From contig NC_068981.1 of the NCBI RefSeq assembly GCF_001194135.2, positions 173,228,277-173,292,276 of the forward strand: 64,000 nucleotides of DNA, written 5' to 3'. This DNA is from Octopus bimaculoides. Its lineage: Eukaryota. A model generated the notes under the pieces. That model did not search any database. It saw nothing but the letters and a program-made list of their open reading frames with translations, and had not been told where the DNA came from. How positions within the stretch are numbered: position 1 is the stretch's first letter; each line of letters opens with the position of its first letter. The position numbers and the translations under genes were made by a program. Of the stretch, positions 1-59,945 are shown one piece after another.

Positions 1-369
1 TTTATGCTATGACATCATTAAGTCTTACTTATGAATAATTAAGAAAGTATTTTAGGTACACTTTTGGTCTTTTATACCTATTTAGAATATTAAAATTATT
101 GATAAAACAAGCATTTTAGTTAGCAAAAATATGTTCATGAAACTGAAATACTGGTCTTAAATCCTATCTAAATAATAATTCTAATTATTGTTGCTTTAGT
201 GAGAATAAAACTCATGTAATGTTCCTAGTCGCTTCAATATGGCTGTCCGTTTGAATGGACTTTACTGCAATTTTTTAACCCCAAGAGGACTAGCTGGTTA
301 ATGATACACAGCTGTGTCCAATATATTGCGAGCAGGGAAGTGAACCCCTACCATCCTCTAGCAGCGGGA

Positions 370-419
370 CCAGCAGGCCAGCCTGGTTTCAGGCTATTTC
401 TGCCTCTCTTCAGTACTGG
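370..419 (-). ncRNA. Type I hammerhead ribozyme motif, probably inactivated (GUC to GCC)
   Basis: Reverse complement reads CCAGTA-CTGAAGA-G-AGGC agaaata GCCT-GAAAC-caggctg-GCC-TGCTGG. Stem I is 6 bp (one GU) and stem II is 4 bp. Confidence 0.65.
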
Positions 420-937
420 ACACCTCATCTACTAGAGATGGCAATAGCTTGCTTCTGCTTGCAATATATATAAATTCAAGCAACAAACAGTTGCTGATTT
501 TTGCAACCAGCAAAAATGTTAATTCTAAAATCTCTGTAAGAGATCATCGCAGTAGTTGTACTAACAAGTTATGTTTGCAGCCACTTCAACATGGCTGTCT
601 GTTCGAATGGAGGCAGAAATAGCCCGAAACCAGGCTGGTCTGCTGGTCCTATCATTAGAAGGTAGTAGGGGTTCACTCCCCTGCTCACAAAATATTGAAA
701 GCAGCTGTGCCTCGTTAACCAACTAGAGATGTCCTCTTGAGGTTAAAGAATTCACAGTAAAGTCTGTTCAAATGGACAGCCTTGTTGATGTGGCTATGAA
801 CATTACTTGTTAGTACAACTACTGTGTTGATCTCTTAGATTTTAGAAATAGCAATTTTGCTTGTCACAAAATCAGTGACTGTGTTGCTTAAATTTATATA
901 TACAGCGAGCTACTGCCATCTCTAGCAGATGAGGTGT

Positions 938-987
938 CCAGTTCTGAAGAGGAGCAGAAATAGCTTGAAACCAGGCAGGTCTGCTGG
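938..987 (+). ncRNA. Type I hammerhead ribozyme motif (all core nucleotides present, one stem I mismatch)
   Basis: CCAGTT-CTGAAGA-G-GAGC agaaata GCTT-GAAAC-caggcag-GTC-TGCTGG. Stem I CCAGT/GCTGG, stem III ACC/GGT, GUC cleavage triplet. Confidence 0.7.
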
Positions 988-2559
988 TCACATTGCTAGA
1001 AGGTAGTAGGGCTTCGCTTCCTTCGCAATATATCGGATGCATCGTTAACCAGCTAGAGGAGATGTCCTCTAGAGGTTAAAGTCTGTTCGAATGGACAGCC
1101 ATGTTGAAGTGGCTACAAACATTACTTGCTAATACAACTACTGCATTGATCTCTTAGAAAGATTTTAGAGCTAGCATTTTTGCTTGTTGCAAAACTCATG
1201 TACTTTACAACTTAACTTAACTTATAAGATTTATTGCCCTTAATTTAGGCTCAAATTACATGTTTTTGAAAATGTCAAAGATTCTGTAAGATATAGCTAG
1301 ATGAAGGATATTGTATGAATTGTAGAAAGGGAATTGCGAGAGAGCTGTGTGTGTTTTAAACTTTTTTTTTATAAATCTGATAAATTAAGAAAAATAGTTT
1401 AAAAATCTTATTTAGTTTCTTAATAGAGCATGTTTTTATTGTATTTTGTAAAAGTTACTTTACTTTAAACAGTACAGCCACCACCATCATTGTTTATTTT
1501 ACATTACTATAAGATGTAAATATTGTGTTTTGATTATATAAGGGAAGCTTGTTTGTAAGGTGTGCTATACTCAAATTTTCGGGGGGGTTTTTTGGGTTCT
1601 TTTGCATTAAATTGTGTTAAACTCGTTTATCCAAGTTGTTACATTCTTAATTTTCTTGCCGTATCTCTGCTTCAATTATTATCTAGCCATTTGTCTGTGT
1701 TATCTCCCTCTGTTTATTTCTTCTGTAACTATTATATAATCAACATTTATTTTATGTTTGACAATTTTATATTCATTTTGCACAAGTGTATTGTAAAATT
1801 TATTATTCATATTTTGCATCTAGTCATTAACAATTTATGCTACTAAATGTCTGATTTACTTTACAATGAGTACATAATATATATAGCACTCTACACTTTA
1901 TAAGGTGATTAGCCGATTAACATAGACAACTATAAGGAGGATTCTTTAGTCTTGCTGTTGACATGGCAACTCCTATTGTACTGGTGTTATAAGAAATTGC
2001 AGCCAGAGGATTACGTAAAGTGATTGACCAATAAGAATGGCATCCAATTTTGGAAAACATGTTAAAAATGGAATATAAGAAGTGAGATGTCCCAAAAAGT
2101 TTAAGTTTAAAATGAAAAAGGTTGAACATCAAAAGCAGCATAAATCACTTTTAAAATAAATAAATTCAATTTGATTCTTAACTCTTCTTTATTGAAATTA
2201 AAGCATTGTTTGAAAATAAAATTTTAGTGAATGCACCATGAAAGATTAAAATGAAATAAATTATATTCAAGAATATTGGAAAGTTTATCTCTACAAAATT
2301 TATTACAGAAACATTGTATCTTTTGAATGGTGGTTAAATTAAAAATCCAGATAAAAAATTTACTAACATTTTGTTCTTAGATAGATTTGTTTCTACTAGA
2401 TCCTTCTTCACAGAAGCCATTGGTTATCTTCAAATTAGAATCTGTGAAATTGAAAATTTTAATGTATTGTATTATTATATTTAGTAGGAGTCAATTCATT
2501 TTCACTGACTCCAACTCCACATCTGTGATGATGACAATAAAAGTTCTGTCAGTGTAACC

Positions 2560-7999: not shown

Positions 8000-8930
8000 T
8001 ATAGGAGTGGGCTCTACCATTATACTCCAATTAAGGGTGTACTCTCTTTTTCTAGATTTTAATTCCCATATGACTGCTGAGGACATGCGTAAGCTTGCAA
8101 GAAATGAAGCTAGTATGCTCCGCTGGATGTGTAATGTCAGTGTGCATACACAACAGACTGTGAGCATCCTGAGAGAAAAGTTGGACATAAGAAGCATCAG
8201 ATGTGGTGTGCAAGAGAGACTGCGCTGGTATGATAATGTGTTGCGTATGGATGAGGACAGCTGTGTGGAAAAGTGTTACAGCCTAACAGTGGGGGGAACC
8301 TGTGGAAAAGGTAGAGCCAAGAAGACCTGGGATGAGGTGGTGAAGCATGACCTTTGAACGTTTGGCCTCACTGAGGCAATGACAAGCGACCAAGACCTTT
8401 GGAGATATGCTGTGCTTGAGAAGACCTGGCAAGCCAAGTGAGACCATAACCGGCCCATTTAAGAGTACCCTTCAATCATTGGACAATAAACTATGCTTGA
8501 GAAGACCTGTTGAATCAAGTGAAATCATTGTCGTGGCCGATACCAGTCCCATTGGACTGGCTCACGTGCCAGTGACATGTAAAATGCACCAGTGCCGCTT
8601 GGCTGGTCCTGTTCCAGTAGCACGTAAAAAGCACCATTTGAGCGTGGCTGTTGCCAGTGTCGCCTGACTGGCTCCCCTGCTAGTGGCATGTAAAAAGCAC
8701 CATTTAAGCGTGGTTGATGCTAGTATTGCCTGACTGGCCCTCGTGCTGGTGACATGTAAAAAGCACCCACTACACTCATGGAGTGGTTGGCGTTAGGAGG
8801 GACATCCAGTTGTAGAAACCTTGTCAGATCAGATTGGAGCTTGGTGTAGTCTTTTGGCTTGCCAGTCCTCAGTCAAGCTATTCAACCCATGCCAGCATGG
8901 AAGGCAGATGTTAAATGATGACGATGATGC
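8000..8930 (+). mobile_element. RTE-clade LINE 3' end (ORF2 C-terminus, 3'UTR, (GAT)n tail)
   Basis: ORF 8007-8357 NEASMLRWMCNVSVH...VQERLRWY...GRAKKTWDEVVKHDL. The 3'UTR ends in AACCCATGCCAGCATGGAA...GTTAAATGATGACGATGATG. Confidence 0.85.
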
Positions 8931-12460: not shown

Positions 12461-12653
12461 AACTTCACAGAAACAGTCCTTTTGCTCATTTACCAGTCCA
12501 GGTTATAGTGCACATATAGCGATAACTGTTACTGTTAAGTAACTCCTGATTAGTCTTTGCAAAGAGAGAACTCAATTATACCTCTCATCTCTGAACTCTG
12601 CAAAGTGTTTAGTAAAAAACATTTTATATTTAATTACAAACCAGATAGGGATT

Positions 12654-13175
12654 TACATTATTTACATTTGATGGATATTTGTCCTCATCTTGTTTGTTGT
12701 TAACACAATGTTTCAGCTGATATACCCTCCAGCCTTCATCAGGTGTCCTGTGGAAATTTCGAACCTGGGTTCTCATTCCTAAGGTATTTTTTGATGTTAT
12801 AACAATAATAATTACTATTATTATTCAGGTAACTGCCTGGAATCAAACTCGGAATCTTGGGGTTAATAGCCCACGCTCTTGACCACTACGCCATATGCCC
12901 ATGGGCATATGGTGTAATGGTTACCACTACGCCATAAACCCATGGGCATATGGCGTAGTGGTTAAGAGCGCGGGCTACTAACCCCAAGATTCCGAGTTCA
13001 ATTCCAAGCAGTGACCTGAATAGTAATAATAATATCGAAAAATACCTTAGGAATGAGAACCCAGGTTCAAAATTTCCCTAAGAAACCTGATGAAAGCTGG
13101 AGGGTATATCAGCCGAATTGTTGTGTTAACAACAAACAAGATGTGGACAAATATCCGTCAAATGTAAATAATGTA
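12654..13175. mobile_element. Head-to-head palindromic element: two inverted tRNA-headed SINE-like arms, each with a hammerhead-like motif
   Basis: 12654-12905 is the reverse complement of ~12935-13175. A box TGGCGTAGTGG at 12951-12961 and B box GAGTTCAATTC at 12994-13004. Central GCCCATGGGC-like palindromes. Confidence 0.85.
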
Positions 13176-13470
13176 CATAATTTCTCATCTCTTAAACATA
13201 GAACAGAAAGGGATTTGTTTGATAACTGTGAAGTTTCTAGTACTGACTTGTTCTAGTTTCTATGTACCGCAGTTTCAGTTGCTAAAAGATGGGTACTATT
13301 TTCCAAGCTTTTTATTTTTTTTCTACATATGTTTCATTAATATGAGGTTTTTTGTGTTTGAAATCCATTATTTCTATGAAGTCTGTTGTAAAAATTATTA
13401 TATATATTAATGTTATATAGGAATTTTTGAGTTACCTCTGATTATAGGGATGGTTTTGTTTTATTTTCAG

Positions 13471-14015
13471 ATTCATCTGTGTCAGCACCATTACAACCTG
13501 AAGAACCAGATAAGGATATTTCGACATCTGATAAGGATGATACAGAAATAAGTAAGGATGTATCTAATTCTGATGAAAAGGAAGAGGCTGATCTGGATAA
13601 TGATAACGGCAAAGAAGTTGACAGCAGTTCTGAAAGGCTTTCTAAAACACCATCTCCATTACAATTTTCAAGAAACAATTCCAATGAAGATTTGTCAAGT
13701 GTTACTAAGTCTTGTGAAATTTCAGAAAGCTGGGAAAATAACGATAAAAAAAGATCTGCTGAAGAAGCTGATGATTGGACTGATGCAGAAATTGCCCCAG
13801 TAAAACGATCTCGTTTAGATGATGTAATTGGTAACTTAGGGTCACGGATTGGTATTAAATTAGATTCTATCCCATTTGTTGACGAATTGGAAGAGTCTAG
13901 TAAAGACAGTGATTCTAGTGAAAAACCCTCTGAAGAATCAGTAACAACAGACGAAGAAGAAGATCAAGAAAAAACATCAAATTCAGACCAAAAGTACATC
14001 AAGATATCTGAAAAG
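13471..14015 (+). CDS. ATF7IP: ATF7IP coding exon (first visible; acidic N-terminal region; phase 1 in, phase 0 out)
   Basis: Acceptor TTATTTTCAG|AT and donor AAG|GTAGCA. Open frame DSSVSAPLQPEE...KYIKISEK, in phase with the next exon. Confidence 0.85.
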
Positions 14016-14489
14016 GTAGCATTCATTCATTTTGGAAATATCTTTGTTCCTAGATTACTGCTTCATTGTACTTTGAACTTAGATATTTTTGTCTCTCAAT
14101 TCAAAGGAACATTTTTCAAATATCATACCCTTTAACTCTTTTGTTATTATATTTCTGTTGACATACACCTCATTTGTTTCAGTTAATTTTCAGATAATGA
14201 AGGCATGAGTAAATTAACTTGTTATTATTAAACTGGTGTTTGGAACATAAACATGAAATTTTGATGGAAGGTTAAAACAGTATGCTTACATCATAGAGCT
14301 AGATGTGATCTTGGCAAGTTGGTATTAGCTAAATATTTCTGGATTAAAAGTGTCATAAGATTTCATTACCATTTTAGTAATATTTCATTATAAAAATACA
14401 AATTAAAAGAAGAAAAAAAAAATTAGAAAAAAAAAATTTAATGTAATGATATATTGATTACAGTTTTAATGCTTTATATATATTGTCGA

Positions 14490-15371: not shown

Positions 15372-15581
15372 GAATTAGCTGAGATTGTAAAAAGAGAAGT
15401 TATAAATATTTTAAACAGTAAAGAAACCACTTTAGAAAGTCTTCAGGTTAAAATTGATGAATTACAAGCGACAAATGAATATTGGAAAACACAAGCAAAG
15501 GAGTTACATAAAGAAGTTCTTGAACTTACTGTGTTGCAGCAAAAACAAGAAAAACGAAAAGCTGCTGCTATTGCCCTTAAG
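15372..15581 (+). CDS. ATF7IP: ATF7IP exon: coiled coil (putative SETDB1-binding region)
   Basis: TAG|GAA...AAG|GTAATA, 210 nt. ELAEIVKREVINILNSKETTLESLQVKIDELQATNEYWKTQAKELHKEVLELTVLQQKQEKRKAAAIALK. Confidence 0.92.
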
Positions 15582-15805: not shown

Positions 15806-17343
15806 ATCATCATCATCGTTTAACGTCCGCTTTCCATGCTAGCATGGGTTGGACGATTTGACTGAGGACTGGTGAAACCGGATGGCAACACCAGGCTCCA
15901 GTCTGATTTGGCAGAGTTTCTACAGCTGGATGCCCTTCCTAACGCCAACCACTCAGAGAGTGTAGTGGGTGATTTTACGTGTCACCCGCACGAAAACGGC
16001 CACGCTCGAAATGGTGTCTTTTATGTGCCACCCACACAAGCCAGTCCAGGGGCACTGGCAACGATCTCGCTCGAAAATCCTACAGGAGCCAGTCAGGNNN
16101 NNNNNNNNNNNNNNNNNNNNNNNNNNNNNNNNNNNNNNNNNNNNNNNNNNNNNNNNNNNNNNNNNNNNNNNNNNNNNNNNNNNNNNNNNNNNNNNNNNNN
16201 NNNNNNNNNNNNNNNNNNNNNNNNNNNNNNNNNNNNNNNNNNNNNNNNNNNNNNNNNNNNNNNNNNNNNNNNNNNNNNNNNNNNNNNNNNNNNNNNNNNN
16301 NNNNNNNNNNNNNNNNNNNNNNNNNNNNNNNNNNNNNNNNNNNNNNNNNNNNNNNNNNNNNNNNNNNNNNNNNNNNNNNNNNNNNNNNNNNNNNNNNNNN
16401 NNNNNNNNNNNNNNNNNNNNNNNNNNNNNNNNNNNNNNNNNNNNNNNNNNNNNNNNNNNNNNNNNNNNNNNNNNNNNNNNNNNNNNNNNNNNNNNNNNNN
16501 NNNNNNNNNNNNNNNNNNNNNNNNNNNNNNNNNNNNNNNNNNNNNNNNNNNNNNNNNNNNNNNNNNNNNNNNNNNNNNNNNNNNNNNNNNNNNNNNNNNN
16601 NNNNNNNNNNNNNNNNNNNNNNNNNNNNNNNNNNNNNNNNNNNNNNNNNNNNNNNNNNNNNNNNNNNNNNNNNNNNNNNNNNNNNNNNNNNNNNNNNNNN
16701 NNNNNNNNNNNNNNNNNNNNNNNNNNNNNNNNNNNNNNNNNNNNNNNNNNNNNNNNNNNNNNNNNNNNNNNNNNNNNNNNNNNNNNNNNNNNNNNNNNNN
16801 NNNNNNNNNNNNNNNNNNNNNNNNNNNNNNNNNNNNNNNNNNNNNNNNNNNNNNNNNNNNNNNNNNNNNNNNNNNNNNNNNNNNNNNNNNNNNNNNNNNN
16901 NNNNNNNNNNNNNNNNNNNNNNNNNNNNNNNNNNNNNNNNNNNNNNNNNNNNNNNNNNNNNNNNNNNNNNNNNNNNNNNNNTATCTACCTTCCTACTTAT
17001 TAGGATTTTGGTTTTAGCTAGGTTGACTCTAAGGCCCTTCAATTCTAGACCTTGCTTCCACACCTGAAACTTCTCCTCTAGTTCTGATAGTGACTCTGCA
17101 ATTAGGGCAAGGTCATCAGCATAGAGGAGCTCCCAGGGGCAACCTGTCTTGAACTCCTCTGTGATTGCCTGGAGGACTATGGTAAATAAGAGGGGGCTGA
17201 GGACGGAACCTTGGTGGACCCCTACCTCTACCCGGAATTCATTGCTGTACTCATTTCCAACCCTCACCTTACTGGCAGCATCTCTGTACATGGCTCGCAC
17301 AGCTCTCACTAATCATTCTTTTATCCCAAGTTTCCTAATTTAA
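15806..17343 (-). mobile_element. RTE-clade LINE (RT domain plus 3' tail) interrupted by an assembly gap
   Basis: GVHQGSVLSPLLF and LLYADD RT motifs in ORF 16080-17309 (-). (CAT)n tail and 3'UTR at 15806-16097. Confidence 0.9.
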
Positions 17344-17980: not shown

Positions 17981-19263
17981 GTAAAATATAATACAGTTTT
18001 GCTTTGTTTTTTAACTTGGCCCAGACTGTTGTTAGTACATATATTATCAGCCTACACACTTTAAAACAATTGGGGACTACTTGAAAATTGATATGTTGAA
18101 TTCAGAAGGAAGATCAATGCTGAATAACAAATTAAACCAATAAAACAAAGCAATTAAGCTTACAAGGATTCTTGTATCCTTTCCTCTTGATACTTTTTTA
18201 AAAAATTTATTGACAGCACAGTATTATGAGTTATAATTATGTCGTTTGTTAAAACTGATGAGACTATAGAAATATGGTAGGACTGTCATAAATAAAAATA
18301 ATCTATCATGAAGACAATTAGCTAACTGAATTTTTGAGACTTTTATAGTTTTTAATATTTTTAGACCCAAATATATTACTTTTTTGTTATTTGTGAAAAT
18401 TATTAGGTATTTCAAAGTGATTAAGTAGAGCAACAGACAGGCTAAATAAAACATTGTATTTTAGTTTTGTCTTTTATTCTTCCTGACTTATAAAATAATC
18501 ATCAGTAAGACTAATGAGTATTAATGTTGCTTAGCTGTGTTTTAGTCCCTTCTCCTTTTCATATGCCTTTCGAAATGCCAATTGCTTGAATGTTATGGGG
18601 AGTAGTTAATGTTTAAAGTAATCTTGAAGCTTTTATTTTGCAGTATTTTTAACTTGGTTTAATATATAATATGGTCTTTGGTTAAAACCTTGCACTGCCA
18701 TTAGTACACTCATTGTAATTTGCTTTTCATTTACAAGGTTAATTATATACGCATACTTTCATACACACTATGTGATGTTCACACCAACTGCGAATGTCAC
18801 ATTGTAGGTTATACTACATTGTTTAATTCTTATAAGGGGGGGGGAATAATAATAAAGTGGCTGCTAAATATAGATTGAGTGATGTTTAAGTTCAGTTTAT
18901 TGTATCCATGTGATAGTAGGAAAGTGATATTAGTAGCTATTCTTATAACATTTTTCACAAAAGTGAAGAGAATAAAATGGCTGCTTCTGATCCAATCCTT
19001 AGTTGTTTTTATGTAATCTAAATAGATTTTTAACTCTAGTGTATTTATGATCATAATCATTATCACCACCAGTATTATCATGTTTCATAAAAAATCAGTC
19101 ATTTATACTTTATAATTCTTATATATTTTGGCTATATGAAGGTGTTATGTTTTACACCTGTTGTGATCACGTCATTTAAAAAAAATATTGCAGTCATCCC
19201 AATAATCATACTTGTCATGTTTTACACCTATTGTGATCACATTTTTTTTTATCCTTGTTGCAG

Positions 19264-19545
19264 ACTTCCCAAACTCCCAGTTCAACTAAAACAGTCAAAA
19301 TAACCACACAAAAGAAATCCATTCAATCACCTTCCTCTTTATCATTTTCATCATCATCATCTTCATCACTCTCAGCCCCTGTGGCAGTTTCAGCAAATCT
19401 TGGCATATCTGAAAACTCATCCTCTCATTGGTCTCGTGCAATCACCACTCAAGATACTATACAGTCTAATTTGGTAGCTCAGCCTACAGTGACTTCAGGC
19501 TTACTGTCCAATAATACTACTCCCTTAGCAGTCTTTAAGAAAAAG
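19264..19545 (+). CDS. ATF7IP: ATF7IP exon (Ser/Thr-rich)
   Basis: TTGCAG|ACT...AAG|GTGAGA, 282 nt, phase 0/0. Confidence 0.9.
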
Positions 19546-20902
19546 GTGAGAAAATATTAAACATGGAAGATATTTAGTTGTCTTCTTTCATATTCACAAA
19601 TAATTCCATTTATGAATTTTTTTTTTGGTAGTCATGAATTATGAACCCATAAAATTTGACTAATAATTTTTATACATAATGTTTATACTTTTACAAATGT
19701 TTTAAGTTGTTGATAAATAAATTGTAGATTCTTGTAAGGTCTTTAAATATAATTTTTTTTAGGCTTACTAATATTGATAAATTTGTATAATCCTAAACAT
19801 ACTATAGATGCAGATATAGCATATTAATCGTGAATATTTGGATAAATCAATTAGTGATAAAATGTAGATGAAAAAAAGTAACCTGAACATATGATTTTAC
19901 ATAATTACCATAATAATTATGAATTATTCAGTTTTGCCCCAGTGTTAAAAATTCTTCACTACAATCCCTTTGGATTTCTAGAGTAGATATATTTTGTATA
20001 ATAATCTTCTAAGAATTAGTTTTGATTGAATTTATATTTCTAAATTTAGCCTTGTATAATAAATCTAAAAAAATATTTTGTTCCTGAGATAAAATCTCTC
20101 AAGGTGTTAGAGTTTCTGTATTTATTCATATTCGCTGATTTTTGTTTCAACCAAATATGTTTACTTTTTCTCTTTTACATGTGCTTCTCCTTTGTCATTT
20201 CAAACATTTTACCATGCATTTTCATATTTATATTAGATACTTCATTTAGAACATTTTTATGCTTTTCTTTTTCTTTTGTTAAAAAAAAATGTAGTAAAAC
20301 TTCTATTTAGATAATATATTTTCATTATGTGGCAACATTTTTGTAAGTGAAATATATTTGGATTGTCAAGTTGTTTGAAAATTGAGACTTCATGACACAA
20401 ATATGGAAACGTATTTTAATTCACATTAGTTAATATTTTGGGGATTTTTACATTCACACAAGACAGATAAAGAGAGTAATGTGATGGTTGAAGTATATTT
20501 TTCCCTATTTTCATTTACTCTATATAAATGCTTCTAATGACATTAAGGTTGAGGCTATCAGTGATCTCTCTCTATATAAAGAGGTTTTTAGATGTATGGT
20601 GAACATGTTTGTGAACACTATTATATAGTTTCCAGTAACATTATTTTATGCCAGCATCAGTTCTCCAAGATAAACTTGCTCTTCTTTCAGTTTTGTATAC
20701 AAGATTATTTTCATAAGTTACTCAAGTGGTAAAGGACATTGTTATTCTTTTTATATCTGTATGATCAATATAGTTGTTTTGTTAAAACTTCTGTAGATTC
20801 AAACTACTGATATATTTTTAATTTACCAAATTGTTGTGCAATTCATTTATTTTGTTGCTGAGAAACAAAATTTAATGAGGTTATTTAAATTTGTTATTCC
20901 AG

Positions 20903-21703
20903 ATTGTGCCACCTAATAATAGTAACAATAACAATAATCAGTCAAAGAATGGACAAGTGAGCAGTCAGTTAACTACACCAGTCACCAAATATCAGTCCAC
21001 AACAGTTAAAAGCTTACTTGATGCGTCACGTAATACAAACCAAGTGTCTACGCCACAAACTTTGCTTTACCAATCTTCTGGTCTAATTGTTGTATCTCCT
21101 CCAACTGCAACTGCAACAACAGCAGCAAATACTACTACTACAACCCGGAGTATTCTTACTAAACCAGTTACAAGTCAGGCACCATCTGGAGCTGTAAAAT
21201 TAATAGATTTAACAGGGGATGATGAAGCACCGTTTAAAAATCAAGCAAATGGAAAGAATGTTGTCCACACAGCTGCCATTGCACCCATGGGATCTGTGCG
21301 GTCAAACATTGTCTCCCAACAAGTTGTTCGTCAGGTAACACCAGTACAACAACCAAAAGTACCTTTTGGTACATCATTTCTTTTAAGTACACCTGCTGGG
21401 ACTCAAATCATCAGCCCATCAGTAACACAAGGTGTAGGAGCAGCAAAACCTGGTGTATGCCAGTATGTTCTTACATCGACACCCAATATCCGGCCGGGTG
21501 CATTAGTTACAGTAGTACCTACTACAGGAACACAGAACTCTTCAGTGAGACCACCAATTGTATCAAGTACAGTTGCAAATGCAGGTTCTTTACCACAGTT
21601 ACGGCCAGCTCAACAATCCACTGCAGTAGCCTCAGTTGATCTAACAAAGGCGATACGGCCACCTCCACCACTTCAAAGTGCCCCAGTGCAACAAAACACA
21701 CAG
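20903..21703 (+). CDS. ATF7IP: ATF7IP large low-complexity exon containing the SIM LIDLTGDDE (21200-21226)
   Basis: TTCCAG|ATT...CAG|GTAAGC, 801 nt, phase 0/0. The IDLT+acidic SUMO-interacting motif matches vertebrate MCAF1. Confidence 0.93.
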
Positions 21704-23479
21704 GTAAGCTGAAAAAAAAAAAATCATACTTCTTTCTTGGATTTGATATCTTAAGTGTTCCAGTTGAGCTTAGATAATGTTTTTAGCTTGGTTAATAACC
21801 AGAACCAAATTAGATATTGTATTTGCATTTAATTTGAAGGAGTATTGAAAATTTTATGTTAAATATTTTCTGGTATGAGTAGGTTACATGTTGTGAAGTA
21901 ATTTTTACCTCTACCGGAATACAGCACAGTGGTATTAATGTCCTGAATTTATATGTGTATAATACATGCTTCTTTTTTTCCAGAAATTTAAACTTAAACA
22001 TTTCAGTGTGTGCATGATGTGTGAGGCCTATTATGTTCTGGACCCTATGTATATTATTATATTTGGGATGACATGACTAAACTAAGTTAATCTATTATCC
22101 AAGCTAATTGATGTGTAACATAGCATTTTAATCATAATAATGTTACATTTTTCTATGATAATGATATTAAATTTTTGTTGTATTTCATAAGTATATCCAC
22201 ATTGGAGATTGTGCCTCTGTCAGTGTCTGAATAAATATAGCAAATGTTTGCTGGTAATTGGTGATATGAAGTAATCAGAAAGTAAAATTGACATTAGTAA
22301 CAAATTTTTTTTTTTTTTTTAATCTGACAAATCTGTGCTGTAAATAGATGCTATCTTGTGTGGTGTTGGCACAATTTATATCCCACAAAATTAACACTCA
22401 AAAATGTTGTGCACTATGGTTAGAATACTTTTTTATTTTTGCCACACGTAAAATACCATATTTTAATTTTAAGATTCTAATTTGTAAAAAAAACTTTCAG
22501 CTGATCCTGAATGTCTGTTGTTCAAAACATTAAAAAAGTTTCATAATGAAAATGTCAGGAGTTTTAAAATATGCACATTTTATAGAATAAGTGCTTTATT
22601 CTCTTTGTGACAATGTGACTGTGTGCATCACAACACAAACTGAATAGGAAGATTGAGACTGTACTTACTACACCATCATTATGAAAATCAAATTGATTTT
22701 CTAGAGCAAAAAAAAAAAAACCCAAAATAATTGTGTAGATTGTGTGATTCTATAATATTGATTTTACAGCAGGTGAACTTTCATACACTGTTAGAATGCA
22801 GAGGTCACTTATAATTTGCTTTACAGAAATTATAATTAATCTAAACACTTCTTTTCCTAAACATCATAGTACTACTAAAGAGAGATTTTTTTCCCTAGTA
22901 ATTAGTGGTGTGCATTGTGATAATTTATATACCTCGTAACAAATTTAATGAAAAGACATCATACTTCTCATTTAATGTAGTGGGTTTTTTTAATGATAAT
23001 TTTTAAGCCTACAGCACAATGTCTGTGGTTCATGCAGGGCTACTGCTCATGTACTCATATAGATCTGAGAATTAAGGATTCATTCTTTGAAAATAGCACT
23101 TAATATCACTACTATACTGGCAGTGGTAGTCAATGTTGAATGTCATATAAATCACAATAAGTACATCTTGCCCCTATTGATTTGTATTTTGGAAATCCCA
23201 GAAAAAGATAACAATTCCCATTGTTTAATAATCACTCTTATAATAAATGCTGTTGTCTATATATTTCATATCATGAAGAAAGATAACTCCACTAATATTA
23301 TAGTTACCAGTTATTTTCCTTTCTTTTCTGTGTGTGTGTGTCTCATTCACTCTTTGGTACCCAGCATCGTCTCTTTCTCTCATTGCTCCTTCATCCTGAA
23401 CCTCATTTTCTTTCACTGCCCTACACCTCAACACCCATTCTCATCTAGATTTTATGCCTACTTATTTCCTGTATATTGA

Positions 23480-47179: not shown

Positions 47180-48810
47180 CAAGGATCACCAAACTTTTTT
47201 CACTGCCGGCCAGATAACTGAGAGAATGACAAGCACAGTCAACATTAACATTTTTCTCAATACAATATAGTGAATACAAAAAATAAAGACTTCCAACATA
47301 TTTATTTACCAAAAAGTTATCAAAGGAGGGGACGTTAGCAATAAGATAATTATATCACACCCAGTATGCACATATCCTAATCTGAGAAGCTAAGCAGCAA
47401 TAAAGGTTAGTGAGATTTGTGAAACTGGTGTTTAGATTTTAAAATATCATCAATATTTGCTTTGGAATTGCTTCATCCAACCAAGAGAATTGTTTTCAGA
47501 TGTTCGTCAGTCAACCTTGTTCGATGTACTGACTTCACATACTTAATTTTTGAAAATGTTTGCTCACAGACGTAACACTGAAAATGAAAGCAATTTCCTC
47601 ATTCCAGTTGTGCTTCAAACAATGAAAGCTTTCTCTGAAATCCTTTGATGATTCTGTACAGATTACAGATGAGGTTATCCTTTCCCTGAAGTTTCAAGTT
47701 CAATTCATTCGTGTGGAATGTGATGTCAATCATAAATGACAACTTTGACAGGTAGGATCTATTTCTCTTTGGGGCTTATAAAAATGAAACAGGACTTTAC
47801 CGCAGCTGAGCCACCTCACTGCTGTGTGATAAAGCAAGTCACAGAACTGAGAAACAATTTCTTCAAGAAAAGCCTGGAACTGGCGGTGATTAAGTGCATG
47901 ACCCTGAATGGAGTTAACCACAGAAACAATTGGTTTCAGTATGCAAGAAATGTTTAAGTCTTTTCCACAGAGTGTTTGCTGATGTATAATGCAGTATATA
48001 AACAGAGCACCCGAGAGTTGAAGATCTTACAACTTAGTCCTGAACTGCTCCACCTCACTCCAGCCATGTTTTTTTCCTCCATCAACTGTAACATTTCGAA
48101 GCTGATTACACTGAAGGTTATAGCCTTGCAAAGTTTTCTGCACTTCCATGAAAATGTCTTCCCCAGTTGTTGTTTTATGCATGCTGCAAATGGATGCCAA
48201 CTCTTCTGTGAGCTGAAAGTCGAAATTAACACCTTGAATGAGCACAAAAAATTATGATGCACTCGAGAGATCAGTAGACTCGTCCAGCATCAGAGAATAC
48301 CACAAGAATTTCCTAGTTTTCTCACATATCTGTAGCACTATGTTCTCTCCAAGTTCTTCTGTTCTCTGCACAACTGAACTTGCTTTCAAACAAAGCGGCT
48401 TTCTCAGGATACAAGTCATTTGCTGCTTCTATCATACACTCTTTGATGAAGTTGCTGTCAGTAAACAGTTTTCCTCCTTCTGCCATCTTATGCACTATTT
48501 TGTAACTTGTACAAGTGACATTCATTTTCAGCAAACATTCTCATGAAGAGATTCCTTTGAGTTTCTGAACTACGTTTCATTAACTCAAATTTTTCAGAAC
48601 ACAACTTTCCAGAAAACTTCAAGTATGTTGACAGACGTTTTGTTTCATAGTGACGCCAAAGATTGTACTCTTTCAAAACAGCAACATTTCCTTTATATAT
48701 CATGCAACTAGCTTTTCAGTTGTTTGTTTCCACAAAGAAGTACTTTTCTCCCCATTTTGCATTGAAAAGACGACGGTCCGCATCTACTTTTCTTTTATTA
48801 GTAGCTATAA
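47180..48810 (-). mobile_element. hAT transposon remnant (Charlie/SPIN, GTF2IRD2-like transposase)
   Basis: KRKVDADRRLFNAKW, VAVLKEYNLWRHYETK, DLLYHTAVRWLSCGKVL motifs. TIR-like CAAGGATCACCAAAC at 47180. Many stops. Confidence 0.85.
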
Positions 48811-50998: not shown

Positions 50999-51640
50999 GT
51001 GTTTATTAAATAATACATAGTTATTTGGGGAGATCGTTTACATCAACATAAACTTTAAAAAAAGTCTTTCACTTTGAACTCTGTATGAATGTATGTGCAT
51101 GATTAACAAATATTTTTACCAGCAGCATAGTATTTGTAGTTTACCCTTATAGTATTGTATAGTATTGACAGCATGGCACAACATACATAAATTAACACTG
51201 GGCCTCTAGACACATGATCCTCTGGGCAATTTCCTAGCATACCCATACCTTAAGATGACACTAGTCAGACTATTTCTTTACTAATACATAATGTCATGTG
51301 AGTTTTTATATTTTACTTTCATATGTTGTATTTGATACGTTTTTTTTTTTTTAGCTTGAGAATGGTTATGTGAAGTAGAATAGTTAGATTTCCCTTTAGA
51401 TAAGACATATTCTATTTAACTCATCTTGCTTGTGTGGAAAATAGTTATTACTCTAATTTCTGGTTGACTGATAGTAGCTATGAAAGATATCCAACTGTAA
51501 TGTTTGAGAAGTGTTTTGTGAACATATTTCTACATTAAGGAGCAGGTAAACCTTGCTAGCATGGAAAAAATGAATACAGATTGTTGAAAGAAAATGTATG
51601 CAATATCAGCTTTTAAAACTGTAAAATTATTTTACTTCAG

Positions 51641-51840
51641 ATTAACTCCAGAATTATTAAAGGACACCGATTATCTGTGAATTACTGCCAATTCTTGAAT
51701 GAGGATAGACTTATACTCAGTTGCTCAGATGACAAAACAACCAAACTTTGGAACCCTACAACAAGTAAATGTATTGAAACATTTCATTATGAAAAATCCA
51801 AAGCTATACGAAAGGCCCATGTTAACTCTAACAATTGCGA
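51641..51840 (+). CDS. WDR88: WDR88-like WD40 exon
   Basis: TTACTTCAG|ATT...GA|GTAAGT. INSRIIKGHRLSVNYCQFLNEDRLILSCSDDKTTKLWNPTTSKCIETFHYEKSKAIRKAHVNSNNC(E). Repeat order matches recalled human WDR88. Confidence 0.88.
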
Positions 51841-52199: not shown

Positions 52200-53870
52200 G
52201 GAAATACTATTTCTTTGATAGTATAGTACTTGTGTATTGGTACTATAGAAAATGACAATACTTCTATTAAAGATTGTTCTAAGGTCCCTAACCCTGTTCA
52301 TGGAATCAACATATAGAGTGGTGTGTCTAGGTTATGTTTGGAGGATAACTGTATGTGAAAAATTAAGAAGTGAATGGAGGTGTAATTTGCTTAAGAACAT
52401 GTGTGTTTTTAGAAATGCTAGCATTAAGGTCATTAATGATCAAATGAAAAGTGTTGGAGTCATAACTGAAACCTAGGAAACATCAAAGTTGATATATTAT
52501 GCAATAAAGAAGTCTAGCAGGAAATTTACTGTTGAAGAAATGAGAGTTGAATGGAGTAGTGCATCAGTAAGAAACTCAGCCAGATGGTTCTTAGGTTGGA
52601 CATAGTTAAGGTTTGGCTGATATCAAGAGTTATAATATTGCTTTCATCAAGAATGAAAGGCTAATGATATGTGACAAAAGAGAATTTGGAAACCATATTT
52701 GCAGTCACTGAGAAAGGAGAAAGATTTATAATGATAAAGGTGGTAGTCTTTATTGACTGTTTCCATACACTTTTGTAATGTTGAAAGGGCAATAAATTAC
52801 TGGTTAGTATGGTTAGAGTGTTGCTCCACTTCAGAAAGTGATACACTGACATGTGCTTCCATAAACTGTAGAGAAAGATCGAAAAGTTTATTAAGGACTG
52901 CAGTAACTCTGGAGTGATGAAAGGAACACCATTAGGACAGGTTGTCTTGCTGGGTTAAAGTGGTTGGAGAAGTTTACACACTTGGTAAGTGCATGGTTAT
53001 GGTGGCTGGAGATCAGGTTAACTATGAAGAGTAGACTCAATGTAAAGAACAGGATCAGTGCAATTGATACATGGGTTATCCCTTTAATGCAATATGGCAC
53101 AGGTGTTGTTAGATGGACAAAGAACAAGCTTGAGGAAATGGAGGAAAGTGATGACAATGACCAAGGAATTACACCCTAAAAGCAATGTCAATAGACTGTA
53201 AACAAGGGGCAAAGAGGTCTCATAAGATGTAAAATCTGTGTTATCAATGAGGAAAACAGTCTGGGATGGTATGTCAAACAGCAGTCTGAACCTTTGGTTG
53301 TTGCTGTTAAAAATAGCAATATGATACCGAGTGAAAGTGTGACATGCCCAAAAGAATTTAAGAAACAAAGAGAGCAAAGATTCAACAACTGGAAATTGAA
53401 AGACATGACCAACACCTAAAGGTGGCTAAGGAAAAATGTTCTGAAAGGATGCACTGAGACATTAATTTGCAGTGCTCAAGAACAAGCTTTGAGAACTAAT
53501 TACACCAAGTTCCAAATAGAGAAGAGTATTGAATTTCCCCCTTGTAGGATATGTGGTATCAAAAATGAAACAGTTTTACATATTGTGAGTGAGTGTAGCA
53601 AATTGGCTCAAAAGGAATACAAAAAGATGCATGATAATGTAGCTAAGTATGTTCATTGGAGAGTGTGTGAGAAGTACAGTCTTGAAAGGACATTGAAATG
53701 ATATGATAGAAAGTTAAGATAGACAAAATGCTGCTAAGCATTTTACTCAATGTACCAACAAATCTGCCAGCTTGTCACCTTAATAATAATAATAATAATA
53801 ATAATGTGGTCAATGAAGAGAGTAGCTGTGATACCAATAGTAATTGATGCACTTGGAAGTATGGTTGATA
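52200..53870 (+). mobile_element. R4/Dong-clade non-LTR retrotransposon remnant (RT thumb, CCHC knuckle, RLE fragment)
   Basis: KNRISAIDTW.IP...YGTGVVRW; CRICG...ETVLHIVSECSKLAQKEYK..HDNVAK.VHW; VIPIVIDALG. (TAA)n tract at 53780-53803. Confidence 0.75.
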
Positions 53871-56689: not shown

Positions 56690-57170
56690 AGAGCCATAGA
56701 TTTTACAGCTAGATGCCATTCTCACAGTTAACTTGAGCAAAAGTGCACCAGTCCGATCACATCTGACACTCTTTCTGGCAGATCCAGTTAGTTTCCTTGA
56801 ATGTTTCCTAACCCAGGATGAGTGTTGGTTTCATCACTTTGAACCAGAGACAAAGAGACAAACCATGCAGAGGAAACACCCCTCCTCACCTGCTCCAAAG
56901 AAGGCCAAGGTCATTTCATCTGCAGAAAAGGTGAAGACCCTAGTTTTTGGGGCTGCAAAAGGCCTTAGGTTTGGAGAGTACTACGCTGACTTGCTGAGAC
57001 AATTATGATTGGATATCAAGAGCAAATACACAAGGAAACTGATGAAACCTGTCTTGTTTCATCAGGTCAATACAACAGCCCACAAATCCTTGGTTTCAAT
57101 AGCTACTGTGCATGACTGTGGCTTTGAACTGGTTCATCAGCCTCCCTTACCTGTACCACTCAAGTGTGGT
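56690..57170 (+). mobile_element. mariner transposase remnant
   Basis: FLECFLTQDECWFHHFEPETKRQTMQRKHPSSPAPKKAK...EYYADLLRQL...LFHQ.N..AH...GFELVH. Confidence 0.85.
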
Positions 57171-58463: not shown

Positions 58464-58590
58464 ATTTTCACAAAAAAACTTCGACATGTCTAAGGTTCAC
58501 ACAAGAGGATGATAAATTAGTTTCTACATCATTTGATGGTTCTGTGTCAGTTTTTGACTTGAGAACAAACAGAGCCACACTTACTTTGAC
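58464..58590 (+). CDS. WDR88: WDR88-like WD40 exon
   Basis: TTTACAG|AT TTT...AC|GTAAGT. (D)FHKKTSTCLRFTQEDDKLVSTSFDGSVSVFDLRTNRATLTL(T). Confidence 0.9.
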
Positions 58591-58985
58591 GTAAGTACAA
58601 TATTTCAAAAGTATAATCTAAAATAAATTGTTTTGATAGTAAATTTATCATAAACAACATACTCAGTTCTTCCTCTGAAATGCTTATACATGTTTGAGAA
58701 ACCTACTTCCTGTGAACTTTTCCCAAGCCATGGATAGTAATTTAAACAACATACTAACTGCACCAATTTGTCTTAACCAACTCTGCTGAAAGAAACTGAT
58801 TCTTTTTCAATTGACCTGCCTAATTTCTAAGTTGCTAAAAACAGCTTATATTTCTGAGGATTAATACATTAAAGCAACTGAATGGCTAATCCTATGAAAT
58901 ACCTGAAGAAATTCAAGTAATTCAAGTGTTATTCTTCATTTCATTATGACTCAGTTTTATTTTCTATTTCATGTCTTTTTGACAG

Positions 58986-59399: not shown

Positions 59400-59945
59400 T
59401 ATACGTATATATATATCATCATCATCGTTTAATGTCCGCTTTCCATGCTAGCATGGGTTGGACGATTTGACTGAGGACTGGTGAACCGGATGGCTGCACC
59501 AGGCTCCAATCTGATCTGGCAGAGTTTCTACAGCTGGATGCCCTTCCTAATGCCAACCACTCCGAGAGTGTAGTGGGTGCTTTTACATGCCAGTCACGTG
59601 GTACTGGCAATGGCCACGCTCAAAATGGTGTTTTTTATGTGCCACCTGCACAGGAACCAGTCCAGTGGCACTGGCAACAACCTCGTTCGAATGATTTTCT
59701 AATGTGCCAGTAAGGAGACGCTGGTAACGATTACGCTCAAATGGTGCTATTTACAGGCCACTAGCACGGAAGCCAGACAGCTACTCTGGCAATGATCACG
59801 CTCGGATGGTGCTGTTAGTGCTCTACTGGCACAGGTGCCGGTCATCGAATATGGTTCAATTACGATTTCGATTTCACTTGCCCCAACAGGTCTTCGCAAG
59901 CAGAATTTAGTGTCCAATGAAGGAGAGGTTGGCATGGGTGCCATA
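59400..59945 (-). mobile_element. RTE LINE 3'UTR/tail copy
   Basis: CATCGTTTAA.GTCCGCTTTCCATGCTAGCATGGGTTGGACG, matching 15817 and 62320. Confidence 0.9.

What the first reader, a model, noticed from the sequence alone, without database searches (positions are those of the whole stretch)
360..990. ~341-bp tandem repeat whose unit encodes a type I hammerhead ribozyme (retrozyme-like locus)
Seen: three homologous motifs (370-419 minus, 610-646 plus and 5'-truncated, 938-987 plus). Their consensus is CCAGTA-CUGAAGA-G-[AGGC agaaaua GCCU]-GAAAC-caggcug-GUC-UGCUGG. This gives the complete hammerhead core, a 6-bp stem I, a 4-bp stem II, and a short near-palindromic stem III (ACCAG-G-CUGGU) ending in a GUC cleavage triplet. 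The plus-strand copies are 341 bp apart. Established: tandem 170-400-bp repeats with one type I hammerhead per unit are the hallmark of metazoan non-LTR retrozymes, which yield monomeric and circular RNAs and are thought to be mobilised by Penelope-like elements. Inference: this is an old insertion of such a family in a probable cephalopod. The minus copy has lost U16.1, while the 938-987 copy keeps all core bases. I cannot say whether this family has been described before.
Basis: partly seen in the sequence, partly recalled or inferred. Interest (0 to 1): 0.85.

Follow-up and report, generated by a model that had tools for sequence, protein, structure and literature searches.

The report
Decayed hammerhead-ribozyme retroelement insertion
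This is an old, dead ~970-bp insertion of a small non-coding mobile element whose ~340-bp repeat unit carries a hammerhead self-cleaving ribozyme motif; animal "retrozymes" of this kind are already known, so it is a fairly ordinary find, though its head-to-head layout preserves traces of how it was inserted.

Summary
The three motifs, their consensus and the 341-bp spacing are all present as described. The real feature is larger than the finding's coordinates. It is a 972-bp insert (219-1190) flanked by a 12-bp target-site duplication (207-218 and 1191-1202). It consists of a minus-oriented arm of about 1.15 units joined head-to-head to a plus-oriented arm of about 1.7 units.

Each unit carries a type I hammerhead-like motif with all 13 core bases. 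There is also an unpaired G between A9 and helix II, which is typical of Penelope-like-element hammerheads. A relaxed descriptor finds only these sites in the window, against 0.003-0.007 expected by chance.

Several results count against the hammerhead reading. Rfam models do not detect the motif even at E<=10. A model I built from validated retrozyme ribozymes scores it at noise level. No single copy is intact, and covariation rests on one pair.

A second, solo copy on an independent Logan contig keeps the core. The ribozyme region is the best-conserved part of the unit.

Verdict: a decayed member of the known non-LTR retrozyme / Penelope-dependent class, probably inserted by target-primed reverse transcription from both strands. 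Self-cleavage, circular RNA and the cephalopod origin were not tested. Moderate-low interest.

The parts
207..218 (.). Left copy of the 12-bp target-site duplication AAAACTCATGTA
   Evidence: It is an exact 12-mer, found only at 207-218 and 1191-1202 in the window, and it lies exactly at the two ends of the repeat. A shared 12-mer or longer between the two 111-nt boundary windows occurred in 43 of 20000 shuffles.
219..610 (-). Inverted (minus-oriented) arm of about 1.15 units. Its 3' end faces the left TSD and its 5' end lies at the central junction.
   Evidence: Inverted repeats I1-I6. BLAST of 213-607 against 767-1128 gave E 6e-75. Unit alignment.
370..419 (-). Hammerhead-like motif A. It has the full CUGAAGA and GAAA boxes, a 6-bp helix I and a 4-bp helix II, with C instead of U at 16.1. 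The predicted cleavage site is between 376 and 375.
609..612 (.). Head-to-head junction of the two arms. The minus arm starts at unit coordinate ~767/1086, and the plus arm starts inside helix II of the hammerhead (unit coordinate ~952). The two arms overlap by a few bases.
611..1190 (+). Direct (plus-oriented) arm of about 1.7 units, with a 5' end truncated inside the hammerhead.
   Evidence: Direct repeat families D1, D2 and D4-D6, spaced 319-341 nt apart. Alignment.
611..646 (+). Hammerhead-like motif B, 5'-truncated. It has no helix I 5' strand and no CUGANGA. It has GUC, with the cleavage site at 640/641, and an A.C mismatch at 10.1/11.1.
641..981 (+). The one complete monomer in cleavage-to-cleavage register (341 nt). 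It has no ORF longer than 86 codons in any frame.
   Evidence: The circular fold has z = -1.85.
938..987 (+). Hammerhead-like motif C. All 13 core bases are present, with GUC and the cleavage site at 981/982. Helix II is GAGC/GCUU, a compensatory variant of AGGC/GCCU. The first helix I pair is a U.U mismatch.
1191..1202 (.). Right copy of the 12-bp target-site duplication AAAACTCATGTA

Best explanation
The locus is one old insertion (219-1190, with a 12-bp TSD) of a short, non-coding, hammerhead-bearing retroelement. This is the class called metazoan non-LTR retrozymes, now regarded as non-autonomous derivatives of Penelope-like elements (PLEs).

**Proposed life cycle**
1. A source array is transcribed into multimeric RNA.
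2. The type I hammerhead in each ~340-nt unit cuts after GUC. It probably acts as a dimer, because its short helix III is a near-palindrome (ACCAG-G-CUGGU) that pairs far better between two copies than within one.
3. The monomer is circularised by a host tRNA ligase.
4. A retroelement reverse transcriptase, most likely from a PLE, copies the circular or multimeric RNA for more than one turn.

At this site, both 3' ends of a staggered break primed cDNA synthesis inward (twin priming). That produced two arms whose 3' ends face the TSDs and whose truncated 5' ends meet head-to-head at ~610.

**Shown here**
- The architecture, the TSD and the lack of coding capacity.
- The motif anatomy, and conservation of the core in four copies at two loci.
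- The age of the insertion.

**Inferred, not shown**
- Self-cleavage.
- Circular RNA.
- The identity of the mobilising enzyme.

The copies here are mutated and are not expected to be active.
For: **Architecture**
- The two arms have opposite orientation, each longer than one unit, with a period of 319-341 bp.
- An exact 12-bp TSD lies at the outer ends.
- There are no terminal inverted repeats, because the arms end at different unit coordinates (~1124 and ~1190).
- There is no ORF longer than 86 codons.
- The insert has 42% GC, against 34.5% for the window.

**Motif**
- It has CUGAAGA, GAAAC, GUC and three helices in type I topology.
- The chance expectation is 0.003-0.007 per window.
- The same descriptor accepts only 1 of 4 experimentally validated retrozyme hammerheads, so it is not lax.
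- The unpaired nt between A9 and helix II, the palindromic helix III, and paired motifs 100-700 bp apart on opposite strands are all published hallmarks of PLE-associated hammerheads (PMC4209133).
- Helix III gives -18.0 kcal/mol as a two-copy duplex, against -1.9 kcal/mol as a hairpin.

**Family**
- An independent solo copy lies on Logan contig SRR11869384_189878 (L002 201-534). It is 82% identical to the minus arm.
- It keeps CUGAAGA-G-AGGC-AGAAAUA-GCCU-GAAAC intact.
- L002 also shares the window's SINE-like repeat.
- The hammerhead region is the most conserved part of the unit: 41 of 50 invariant columns against 177 of 282 elsewhere, Fisher p = 0.005.
- Of the 13 core positions, one changes in one copy.
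- Helix II shows one compensatory change, G-C to A-U.

**Other**
- Monomer RNAs fold better than shuffles: z = -1.85 and -4.7.
- The insertion layout matches the published PLE pattern of a partial tandem plus an adjacent inverted 5'-truncated copy (PMC8557442).
- The class definition comes from PMC7229834.
- Retrozymes as PLE pLTR derivatives: bioRxiv 10.64898/2026.07.22.740005.
Against: - No Rfam hammerhead family matches at gathering score.
- None matches at E<=10 on 1-1600, 925-1000 or 355-432 either. The only trace is a 10.8-bit partial Hammerhead_II hit on CUGAAGAG.
- My covariance model, built from the coral, mussel and axolotl validated hammerheads, scores the two copies at 10-10.9 bits (E about 1-2). 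That is no better than unrelated sites.
- The extra base after A9 is a G. In a viroid hammerhead, G at this position was strongly detrimental (summarised in PMC3705267).
- 10.1-11.1 is A-U, G.U or A.C rather than the usual G-C.
- No single copy passes a strict descriptor.
- The hammerhead fold is 7-8 kcal/mol above the MFE, because AGCCUG pairs with CAGGCU. The validated mussel ribozyme shows a similar gap of 7.4 kcal/mol.
- Covariation is not significant: one pair, with 240 of 500 shuffles as good.
- Only two loci are known, and two of the three full copies compared come from one locus.
- No PLE reverse transcriptase or GIY-YIG ORF is visible in the window (one search tested only ten selected ORFs).
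- TRF does not call the array.
Confidence: 0.7

Rival explanations
1. The locus is not an independent non-autonomous family. It is a severely 5'-truncated insertion of an autonomous Penelope-like element, of which only the terminal (pLTR) region with its hammerhead was copied, in the usual PLE tandem/inverted fashion.
For: - The unpaired nt between A9 and helix II, the palindromic helix III and opposite-strand motif pairs are PLE-hammerhead traits.
- A partial tandem plus an inverted 5'-truncated copy is the PLE insertion signature.
- PLEs expanded in octopus genomes at a JC distance of about 0.2, which is similar to the divergence here, if the host is an octopod.
Against: - The unit closes on itself with a 319-341-bp period at two independent unit-to-unit junctions, one in each arm. 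The template's full length was therefore about 340 nt, which leaves no room for an ORF.
- The L002 copy is also about one unit long.
- Helix II is 4 bp and helix I is 6 bp. That is the canonical retrozyme geometry, not the 6-8 bp and 4-5 bp of PLE minimal hammerheads. G10.1-C11.1 is absent.
- The distinction is partly semantic, because retrozymes are proposed to derive from pLTRs.
Confidence: 0.13
2. It is an ordinary short interspersed or tandem repeat, and the hammerhead-like motif is a non-functional coincidence. It never self-cleaved.
For: - Rfam and the ad hoc covariance model do not separate it from noise.
- The core context deviates from consensus: an extra G, and A-U at 10.1-11.1.
- A more stable alternative hairpin competes with the hammerhead fold.
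- Covariation is not significant.
Against: - The full set of 13 core bases plus three correctly placed helices is expected 0.003-0.007 times per 61 kb.
- It sits in exactly the genomic setting where such ribozymes are known: a ~340-bp unit, low GC, with a TSD.
- The core is invariant, apart from one base in one copy, across four copies at two loci that otherwise differ by 15-24%.
- The deviations from consensus are the ones documented for PLE-type and amphibian retrozyme hammerheads.
Confidence: 0.12
3. It is a DNA-level rearrangement: local duplication and inversion of a satellite, a foldback or MITE-type DNA transposon, or an assembly artefact. No RNA intermediate was involved.
For: The head-to-head inverted geometry could in principle arise by DNA-level rearrangement. 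A second head-to-head pair, of SINE copies, lies at 12640-13190 in the same window.
Against: - The arms differ by 15-24%, so this is not an assembly palindrome.
- The outer ends are not inverted repeats of each other.
- A 12-bp TSD is outside the usual range for cut-and-paste transposons (my knowledge) and fits target-primed reverse transcription.
- A related copy lies at an unrelated locus.
- There is no other copy, and no satellite block, in the 64-kb window.
Confidence: 0.05

Closest known systems
Metazoan non-LTR retrozymes (Cervera & de la Pena 2020, PMC7229834; for example Mytilus Mg353, Acropora Amil224, axolotl Ax330/Ax353)
   Same: - A short non-coding unit: ~340 bp here, against 170-400 bp in the class.
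- One type I hammerhead per unit.
- Helix I of 6 bp and helix II of 4 bp.
- A short palindromic helix III, which implies action as a dimer.
- GC below 45%.
- A TSD longer than 4 bp.
- Both tandem and solo copies.
- The ribozyme is the best-conserved part of the unit.
   Different: - Only 1.7 plus 1.15 units, arranged head-to-head rather than as one array.
- An unpaired G between A9 and helix II.
- A-U instead of G-C at 10.1-11.1.
- Every copy carries a disabling change.
- Expression and circular RNA are unknown.
- There is no sequence similarity to the mussel, coral or axolotl units beyond the core.
Hammerheads in the pseudo-LTRs of Penelope-like elements (Cervera & de la Pena 2014, PMC4209133), and the PLE insertion architecture (Craig et al. 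2021, PMC8557442)
   Same: [quoted passage not shown]
- Palindromic 15.2-16.2 and loop 3.
- Motif pairs on opposite strands a few hundred bp apart.
- An insertion made of a partial tandem plus an adjacent inverted 5'-truncated copy.
   Different: - There is no RT/GIY-YIG ORF, and the unit is only ~340 bp.
- Helix II is 4 bp, not 6-8 bp. Helix I is 6 bp, not 4-5 bp.
- G10.1-C11.1 is not kept.
- Helix III is present, at 3-4 bp.
Schistosoma Sm-alpha and newt satellite 2 (the classic ~330-bp hammerhead repeats, summarised in PMC6155905)
   Same: A dispersed and tandem non-autonomous repeat of about 330-340 bp that carries a type I hammerhead. In the newt and axolotl the ribozyme is active mainly as a dimer, because helix III is short.
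   Different: The sequence is unrelated. Those ribozymes have been shown to cleave, and this one has not been tested.
Twin priming in LINE-1 target-primed reverse transcription (Ostertag & Kazazian 2001; cited from my knowledge, not read here)
   Same: - Two oppositely oriented segments.
- Their 3' ends abut the TSDs and their 5' ends are joined internally.
- There is short microhomology at the junctions.
   Different: - Each arm here exceeds one unit length, which requires a multimeric or circular template.
- There is no poly(A) tail.
- The enzyme is presumed to be a PLE reverse transcriptase rather than L1 ORF2p.

Membership tests
Hammerhead ribozyme, type I | Conserved catalytic core: C3-U4-G5-A6-N7-G8-A9, G12-A13-A14, A15.1-U16.1, H17 | tested here: met
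   All 13 positions are present in copy C and in L002. Copy A has C16.1, and copy B is truncated before the CUGANGA box.
Hammerhead ribozyme, type I | Three helices around the core, with helices II and III capped by loops and helix I open | tested here: met
   In the consensus, helix I is 6 bp, helix II is 4 bp with a 7-nt loop, and helix III is 3-4 bp. 84.7% of pair cells form standard pairs, against 15-44% for slid controls, although that control is biased because the structure was derived from these same sequences. Individual copies carry mismatches.
Hammerhead ribozyme, type I | A9 directly followed by helix II, closed by G10.1-C11.1 (the canonical consensus) | tested here: not met
   An extra unpaired G follows A9, and 10.1-11.1 is A-U, G.U or A.C. 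The unpaired nucleotide is documented as normal for PLE-type hammerheads, but G was detrimental at this position in a viroid ribozyme.
Hammerhead ribozyme, type I | Match to a curated covariance model (Rfam hammerhead families, which include Hammerhead_1, HH9 and HH10) | tested here: not met
   There is no match at gathering score or at E<=10 on short stretches. My own model from validated retrozyme hammerheads gives 10-10.9 bits, which is noise level.
Hammerhead ribozyme, type I | Covariation that supports the helices | tested here: inconclusive
   Four copies show one compensatory pair in helix II, and 240 of 500 shuffles do as well.
Hammerhead ribozyme, type I | Site-specific self-cleavage | not testable with these tools
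   This needs in vitro transcription of monomer and dimer constructs.
Metazoan non-LTR retrozyme | Short tandem repeat of 150-450 bp with one type I hammerhead per unit | tested here: met
   The period is 319-341 bp and there is one motif per unit. However, there are only ~1.7 direct and ~1.15 inverted units, and TRF is negative.
Metazoan non-LTR retrozyme | Non-coding, low GC (below 45-50%) | tested here: met
   The longest stop-free stretch is 86 codons, and GC is 42%. The absence of LTR, PBS and PPT, which is also part of the class definition, was not specifically tested.
Metazoan non-LTR retrozyme | TSD longer than 4 bp when present | tested here: met
   The TSD is the 12-bp AAAACTCATGTA at 207-218 and 1191-1202.
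Metazoan non-LTR retrozyme | [quoted passage not shown] 2026) | tested here: not met
   The plus arm has one complete and one truncated motif. The minus arm has one motif, with C16.1.
Metazoan non-LTR retrozyme | Multicopy dispersed family in the genome | tested here: inconclusive
   One further copy was found (L002). The source genome is not in any searchable collection.
Metazoan non-LTR retrozyme | Expressed as ~170-400-nt linear and circular RNAs | not testable with these tools
   This needs Northern blots or RNase R RNA-seq. The library type of SRR11869384 is unknown.
Penelope-like element (autonomous) | ORF that encodes an RT and a GIY-YIG endonuclease | tested here: not met
   There is no ORF in the locus. 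The only RT domain detected in the window is a gap-interrupted fragment (RVT_1 match in the ORF at ~16.98-17.31 kb on the minus strand). Its type was not determined, and only ten selected ORFs were scanned.
Penelope-like element (insertion mode) | Partial tandem plus an adjacent inverted 5'-truncated copy | tested here: met
   compared with the description in PMC8557442.

The most novel reading that the evidence does not exclude
This family may be a sequence-level bridge between canonical retrozyme hammerheads and PLE minimal hammerheads. It has 6-bp and 4-bp helices I and II, like the former, and the unpaired nt at 9/10.1, like the latter. The locus may also be an unusually legible fossil of how retrozyme RNA is integrated. 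It has a 12-bp TSD, microhomology at both ends, and two oppositely oriented arms that are each longer than one unit. That pattern is the footprint of twin-primed, rolling-circle reverse transcription of a circular RNA. If many such loci exist in this genome, the so far hypothetical mobilisation step of animal retrozymes could be reconstructed from insertion anatomy alone.
Probability: 0.25. Interest if true: 0.55.

Novelty: new member of a known kind. Interest (0 to 1): 0.33.

Why it matters
Retrozymes are the main genomic home of hammerhead ribozymes in animals, and they are a source of abundant small circular RNAs. How they are copied back into DNA is still only inferred.

This locus adds a family in a genome for which I found none reported. 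Two full-text searches linking retrozymes or hammerhead ribozymes with octopus, squid or cephalopod terms returned no such description. Its ribozyme mixes retrozyme and Penelope-type features, which fits the recent proposal that retrozymes derive from PLE pseudo-LTRs.

The insertion anatomy is the kind of evidence that can discriminate between integration models: a TSD plus two inward-pointing arms, each longer than one unit. On its own, though, this is one decayed copy of a known class. It is useful for repeat annotation and as a lead, not a discovery.

Tried and rejected
**RNA models**
- Rfam at gathering score on the whole window: no hammerhead match.
- Rfam at E<=10 on 1-1600, 925-1000 and 355-432: no hammerhead match.
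- Covariance model R1, built from three experimentally validated retrozyme hammerheads taken from the supplement of PMC7229834. It was too weak to discriminate, so I count it as inconclusive rather than negative. The axolotl Ax330 sequence was left out because MAFFT misaligned its bulged helix II.

**Searches for further copies**
- Exact-pattern scans of the metagenome, viral and prokaryotic genome collections with two patterns: no matches.
- Word-indexed protein search with the antisense ORF alignment: nothing. The same search with P0002: only P0002 itself.
- Two protein searches with LINE ORFs, meant to identify the host, failed on time-out.
- The full HMMER scan of representatives gave the one useful hit, P0002, which led to L002.
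- It also gave two spurious tandem-repeat ORFs, P0003 and P0004. L003 has no homology to the unit and gave no hammerhead-core hits before the script stopped. The DNA for L004 was never available and was not examined.

**Host identification**
- The exon at 20.9 kb has only a 70%-identical relative, on ENA contig ERZ21867824:ctg122544l (L001). That locus carries no copy of the element.
- Ten window ORFs are absent from the protein collection.
- SRR11869384 is not mentioned in any searchable paper.
- The taxon therefore stays unverified.

**Other ideas dropped**
- An inverted fragment next to the L002 copy: the alignment score of 20 is below the null 95% value of 23.
- A pol III-type tRNA head in the unit: ARAGORN finds nothing.
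- The bacterial promoter and terminator scan is irrelevant to a eukaryote.
- The second hammerhead-core-like site at 12702-12742(-) lies in a SINE. Its inverted sister copy has GAAUU instead of GAAAC, so I treat it as chance.
Full report
**1. What is in the sequence**

- A = rc(370-419): CCAGUA-CUGAAGA-G-AGGC-AGAAAUA-GCCU-GAAA-CCAGGCUGG-CC-UGCUGG.
- B = 611-646: it begins at AGGC and so lacks helix I and the CUGANGA box.
- C = 938-987: CCAGUU-CUGAAGA-G-GAGC-AGAAAUA-GCUU-GAAA-CCAGGCAGG-UC-UGCUGG.

The cleavage sites predicted for B and C (640/641 and 981/982) are 341 nt apart.

**2. The real extent and architecture**

Repeat finding and self-BLAST show that the repeated DNA runs from ~213 to ~1198 and occurs nowhere else in the 64 kb.
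- It is not a simple array.
- A minus-oriented arm (219-~610) holds about 1.15 units.
- It abuts, head-to-head, a plus-oriented arm (611-1190) of about 1.7 units, with a period of 319-341 bp.
- TRF does not report it, because there are fewer than two direct units, at about 85% identity over ungapped columns with several indels.

An exact 12-mer, AAAACTCATGTA, lies at both outer edges (207-218 and 1191-1202). It occurs nowhere else in the window, and a shared 12-mer between the boundary windows arose in 43 of 20000 shuffles. I read this as a target-site duplication, so the feature is a single 972-bp insertion.

Other properties of the insert:
- The outer ends fall at different unit coordinates and are not inverted repeats of each other.
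- The plus arm's inner end is truncated inside the hammerhead.
- No frame is open for more than 86 codons.
- GC is 42%.

**3. Is the hammerhead real?**

Evidence for:
- All 13 core positions and the three helices in type I topology are present in the consensus.
- A descriptor that allows 0-1 unpaired nt after A9 finds only these two sites in the window, against 0.003-0.007 expected per shuffled window.
- The same descriptor accepts only one of the four experimentally validated retrozyme hammerheads in the supplement of PMC7229834, so it is not lax.
- The extra G after A9 looks like a defect at first. [quoted passage not shown]
- Here helix III (ACCAG-G-CUGGU) gives -1.9 kcal/mol as a hairpin but -18.0 kcal/mol as a duplex between two copies. 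This is the classic dimer mode of newt, axolotl and PLE hammerheads.

Evidence against:
- No Rfam hammerhead family matches at gathering score, or even at E<=10 on 76-78-nt stretches.
- My covariance model from the coral, mussel and axolotl ribozymes scores the two copies at 10-10.9 bits, level with unrelated sites.
- In a viroid hammerhead, a G at the extra position was strongly detrimental.
- 10.1-11.1 is not G-C.
- The active fold is 7-8 kcal/mol above the MFE, because AGCCUG pairs with CAGGCU. The validated mussel ribozyme shows a 7.4 kcal/mol gap.
- No single copy passes a strict descriptor. A has C16.1, C has U.U at 2.1/1.1, and B is truncated.

**4. Related sequence from elsewhere**

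DNA pattern scans of the three collections found nothing, and so did the word-indexed protein search.

A full HMMER scan with the translated antisense frame of the unit found one strong hit: P0002, E = 9e-23.
- Its contig, Logan SRR11869384_189878 (L002, 1255 bp), carries a solo copy of about one unit at 201-534. That copy is 82% identical to the window's minus arm.
- L002 also begins with the SINE-like repeat present three times in the window. It therefore comes from the same or a related species, but from a different locus.
- Its motif keeps CUGAAGA-G-AGGC-AGAAAUA-GCCU-GAAAC exactly. It has lost two helix III pairs and one helix I pair.

Conservation across the three full copies:
- The hammerhead is the best-conserved stretch: 41 of 50 invariant columns against 177 of 282 elsewhere, Fisher p = 0.005. 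The peak extends over 908-987.
- Covariation is minimal. There is one compensatory G-C to A-U change in helix II of copy C, which is not significant.
- Most helix changes are disruptive, as expected for neutral decay after insertion.

**5. Age**

K2P distances are 0.15-0.24 between units within the locus and 0.20-0.24 to L002. Transitions dominate and CpG is depleted. If the units were identical at insertion, each has accumulated roughly 0.08 substitutions per site, so the insertion is old.

A conversion to about 20-35 My is possible only if an octopod rate applies. Using the calibration quoted in PMC13282606 (JC 0.2 at about 56 My), that figure is an inference resting on an unverified taxon.

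**6. Mechanism proposed**

Two observations are best explained by target-primed reverse transcription from both strands of a staggered break (twin priming) on a template longer than one unit, that is, a circular or multimeric RNA:
- The two arms have 3' ends facing the TSDs and 5' ends meeting in the middle, and each arm spans more than one unit.
- There are short matches between target and unit at both outer junctions: AAAA on the right, and 5 of 6 of CATGTA on the left.

This layout is the one described for PLE insertions, namely a partial tandem plus an adjacent inverted 5'-truncated copy (PMC8557442). It also agrees with two published models: retrozyme circular RNAs are copied into tandem cDNA (PMC7229834), and retrozymes are non-autonomous PLE derivatives.

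The monomer RNAs are more structured than shuffles (z = -1.85 and -4.7). Helix I extends into a long imperfect helix, like the "highly self-paired" retrozyme circles.

Self-cleavage, circularisation and the PLE enzyme are inferences. No PLE ORF was seen in the window.

**7. Comparison and verdict**

The locus works like, and by most tested criteria belongs to, the metazoan non-LTR retrozyme class.
- It fails the criterion for an active retrozyme, which requires two consecutive complete hammerheads.
- It fails the Rfam models.
- Its ribozyme is intermediate between canonical retrozyme and PLE minimal types.

I found no description of a cephalopod retrozyme in the searchable literature. The class is, however, reported from molluscs and most metazoan phyla. 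The cephalopod assignment could not be tested.

I rate it as a new member of a known kind, of moderate-low interest. The insertion anatomy is its most informative aspect.

Noticed in passing
window 245-260, 597-612, 762-777, 1081-1096; L002 ~522-537: The unit's 16-nt near-palindrome (GTCTG-TTCGAA-TGGAC) reads in the same absolute orientation on the + strand in all four window occurrences, although its flanks are inverted between the two arms. In the antisense L002 copy it reads CA..CA, as expected. The core therefore looks 'flipped' in both units of the minus arm. This could reflect local gene conversion through the palindrome, hairpin-templated repair, or a subfamily difference.
   Followed up: partly
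window 12640-12905 (-) and 12940-13190 (+): This is a head-to-head inverted pair of copies of a SINE-like repeat. The alignment has 91% mean column identity, and by eye the shared 5' end looks tRNA-derived, although ARAGORN calls no tRNA. The geometry is the same as at the hammerhead locus. One arm contains CUGAUGA-A-[6-bp helix]-GAAAC at 12702-12742 (-), a PLE-minimal-hammerhead-like core expected 0.025 times per shuffled window. It has no helix I, and the sister arm reads GAAUU, so it is probably chance.
   Followed up: partly
window 391-396 / 381-386 and 963-968 / 972-977 (within the motifs): AGCCUG (the helix II 3' strand plus G12) is the exact complement of CAGGCU (in helix III). Together they form a 6-7-bp hairpin that sequesters GAAA and beats the hammerhead fold by 7-8 kcal/mol. 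This may be an inactive conformer of the kind proposed to protect monomeric circles from re-cleavage.
   Followed up: partly
window 13479-14135, 15372-15518, 19255-19560, 20891-21712, ~29599-29769 (+): These are probable exons of one plus-strand gene: acidic/serine-rich, coiled-coil and S/T/P/Q-rich segments with no Pfam match. Its only relative found is 70% identical at the protein level, on ENA contig ERZ21867824:ctg122544l (L001). A second conserved block lies at 29.6 kb. The hammerhead locus lies at least 12 kb upstream.
   Followed up: partly
window 16982-17312 (-), 8007-8357 (+), 53420-53557 (+): There is a reverse-transcriptase fragment (Pfam RVT_1, E = 3.7e-15) cut by the N gap at 16098-16981. 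By eye, two further ORFs resemble LINE C-terminal regions, but neither has a supporting Pfam match. None looks Penelope-like.
   Followed up: partly
window 51617-51772 and 58478-58591 (+): WD40-repeat exons (Pfam WD40 / WDR3-type beta-propeller hits) of a second plus-strand gene.
   Followed up: no
window 47877-48715 (-), 56799-56912 (+), 27168-27278 (+): These ORF fragments look, by eye, like a hAT-type transposase, a mariner-type transposase and a basic arginine-rich repeat protein. None has a Pfam hit at E<=0.01.
   Followed up: no
window 8781-8912, 59440-59562, 62328-62459; L002 2-138: A SINE-like interspersed repeat is shared between the window and the Logan contig at 69-74% identity. It is the only evidence that links L002 to the same or a related species.
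   Followed up: no
L003 10001-11611 (ENA ERZ26859072) and L004 10001-10912 (ENA ERZ25073254): Long ORFs run through tandem repeats (roughly 98-aa and 51-aa periods by eye) in unrelated eukaryote-like contigs. They surfaced as weak profile hits. L003 has no homology to the unit and gave no hammerhead-core hits before the script stopped. The DNA for L004 was never available and was not examined.
   Followed up: partly
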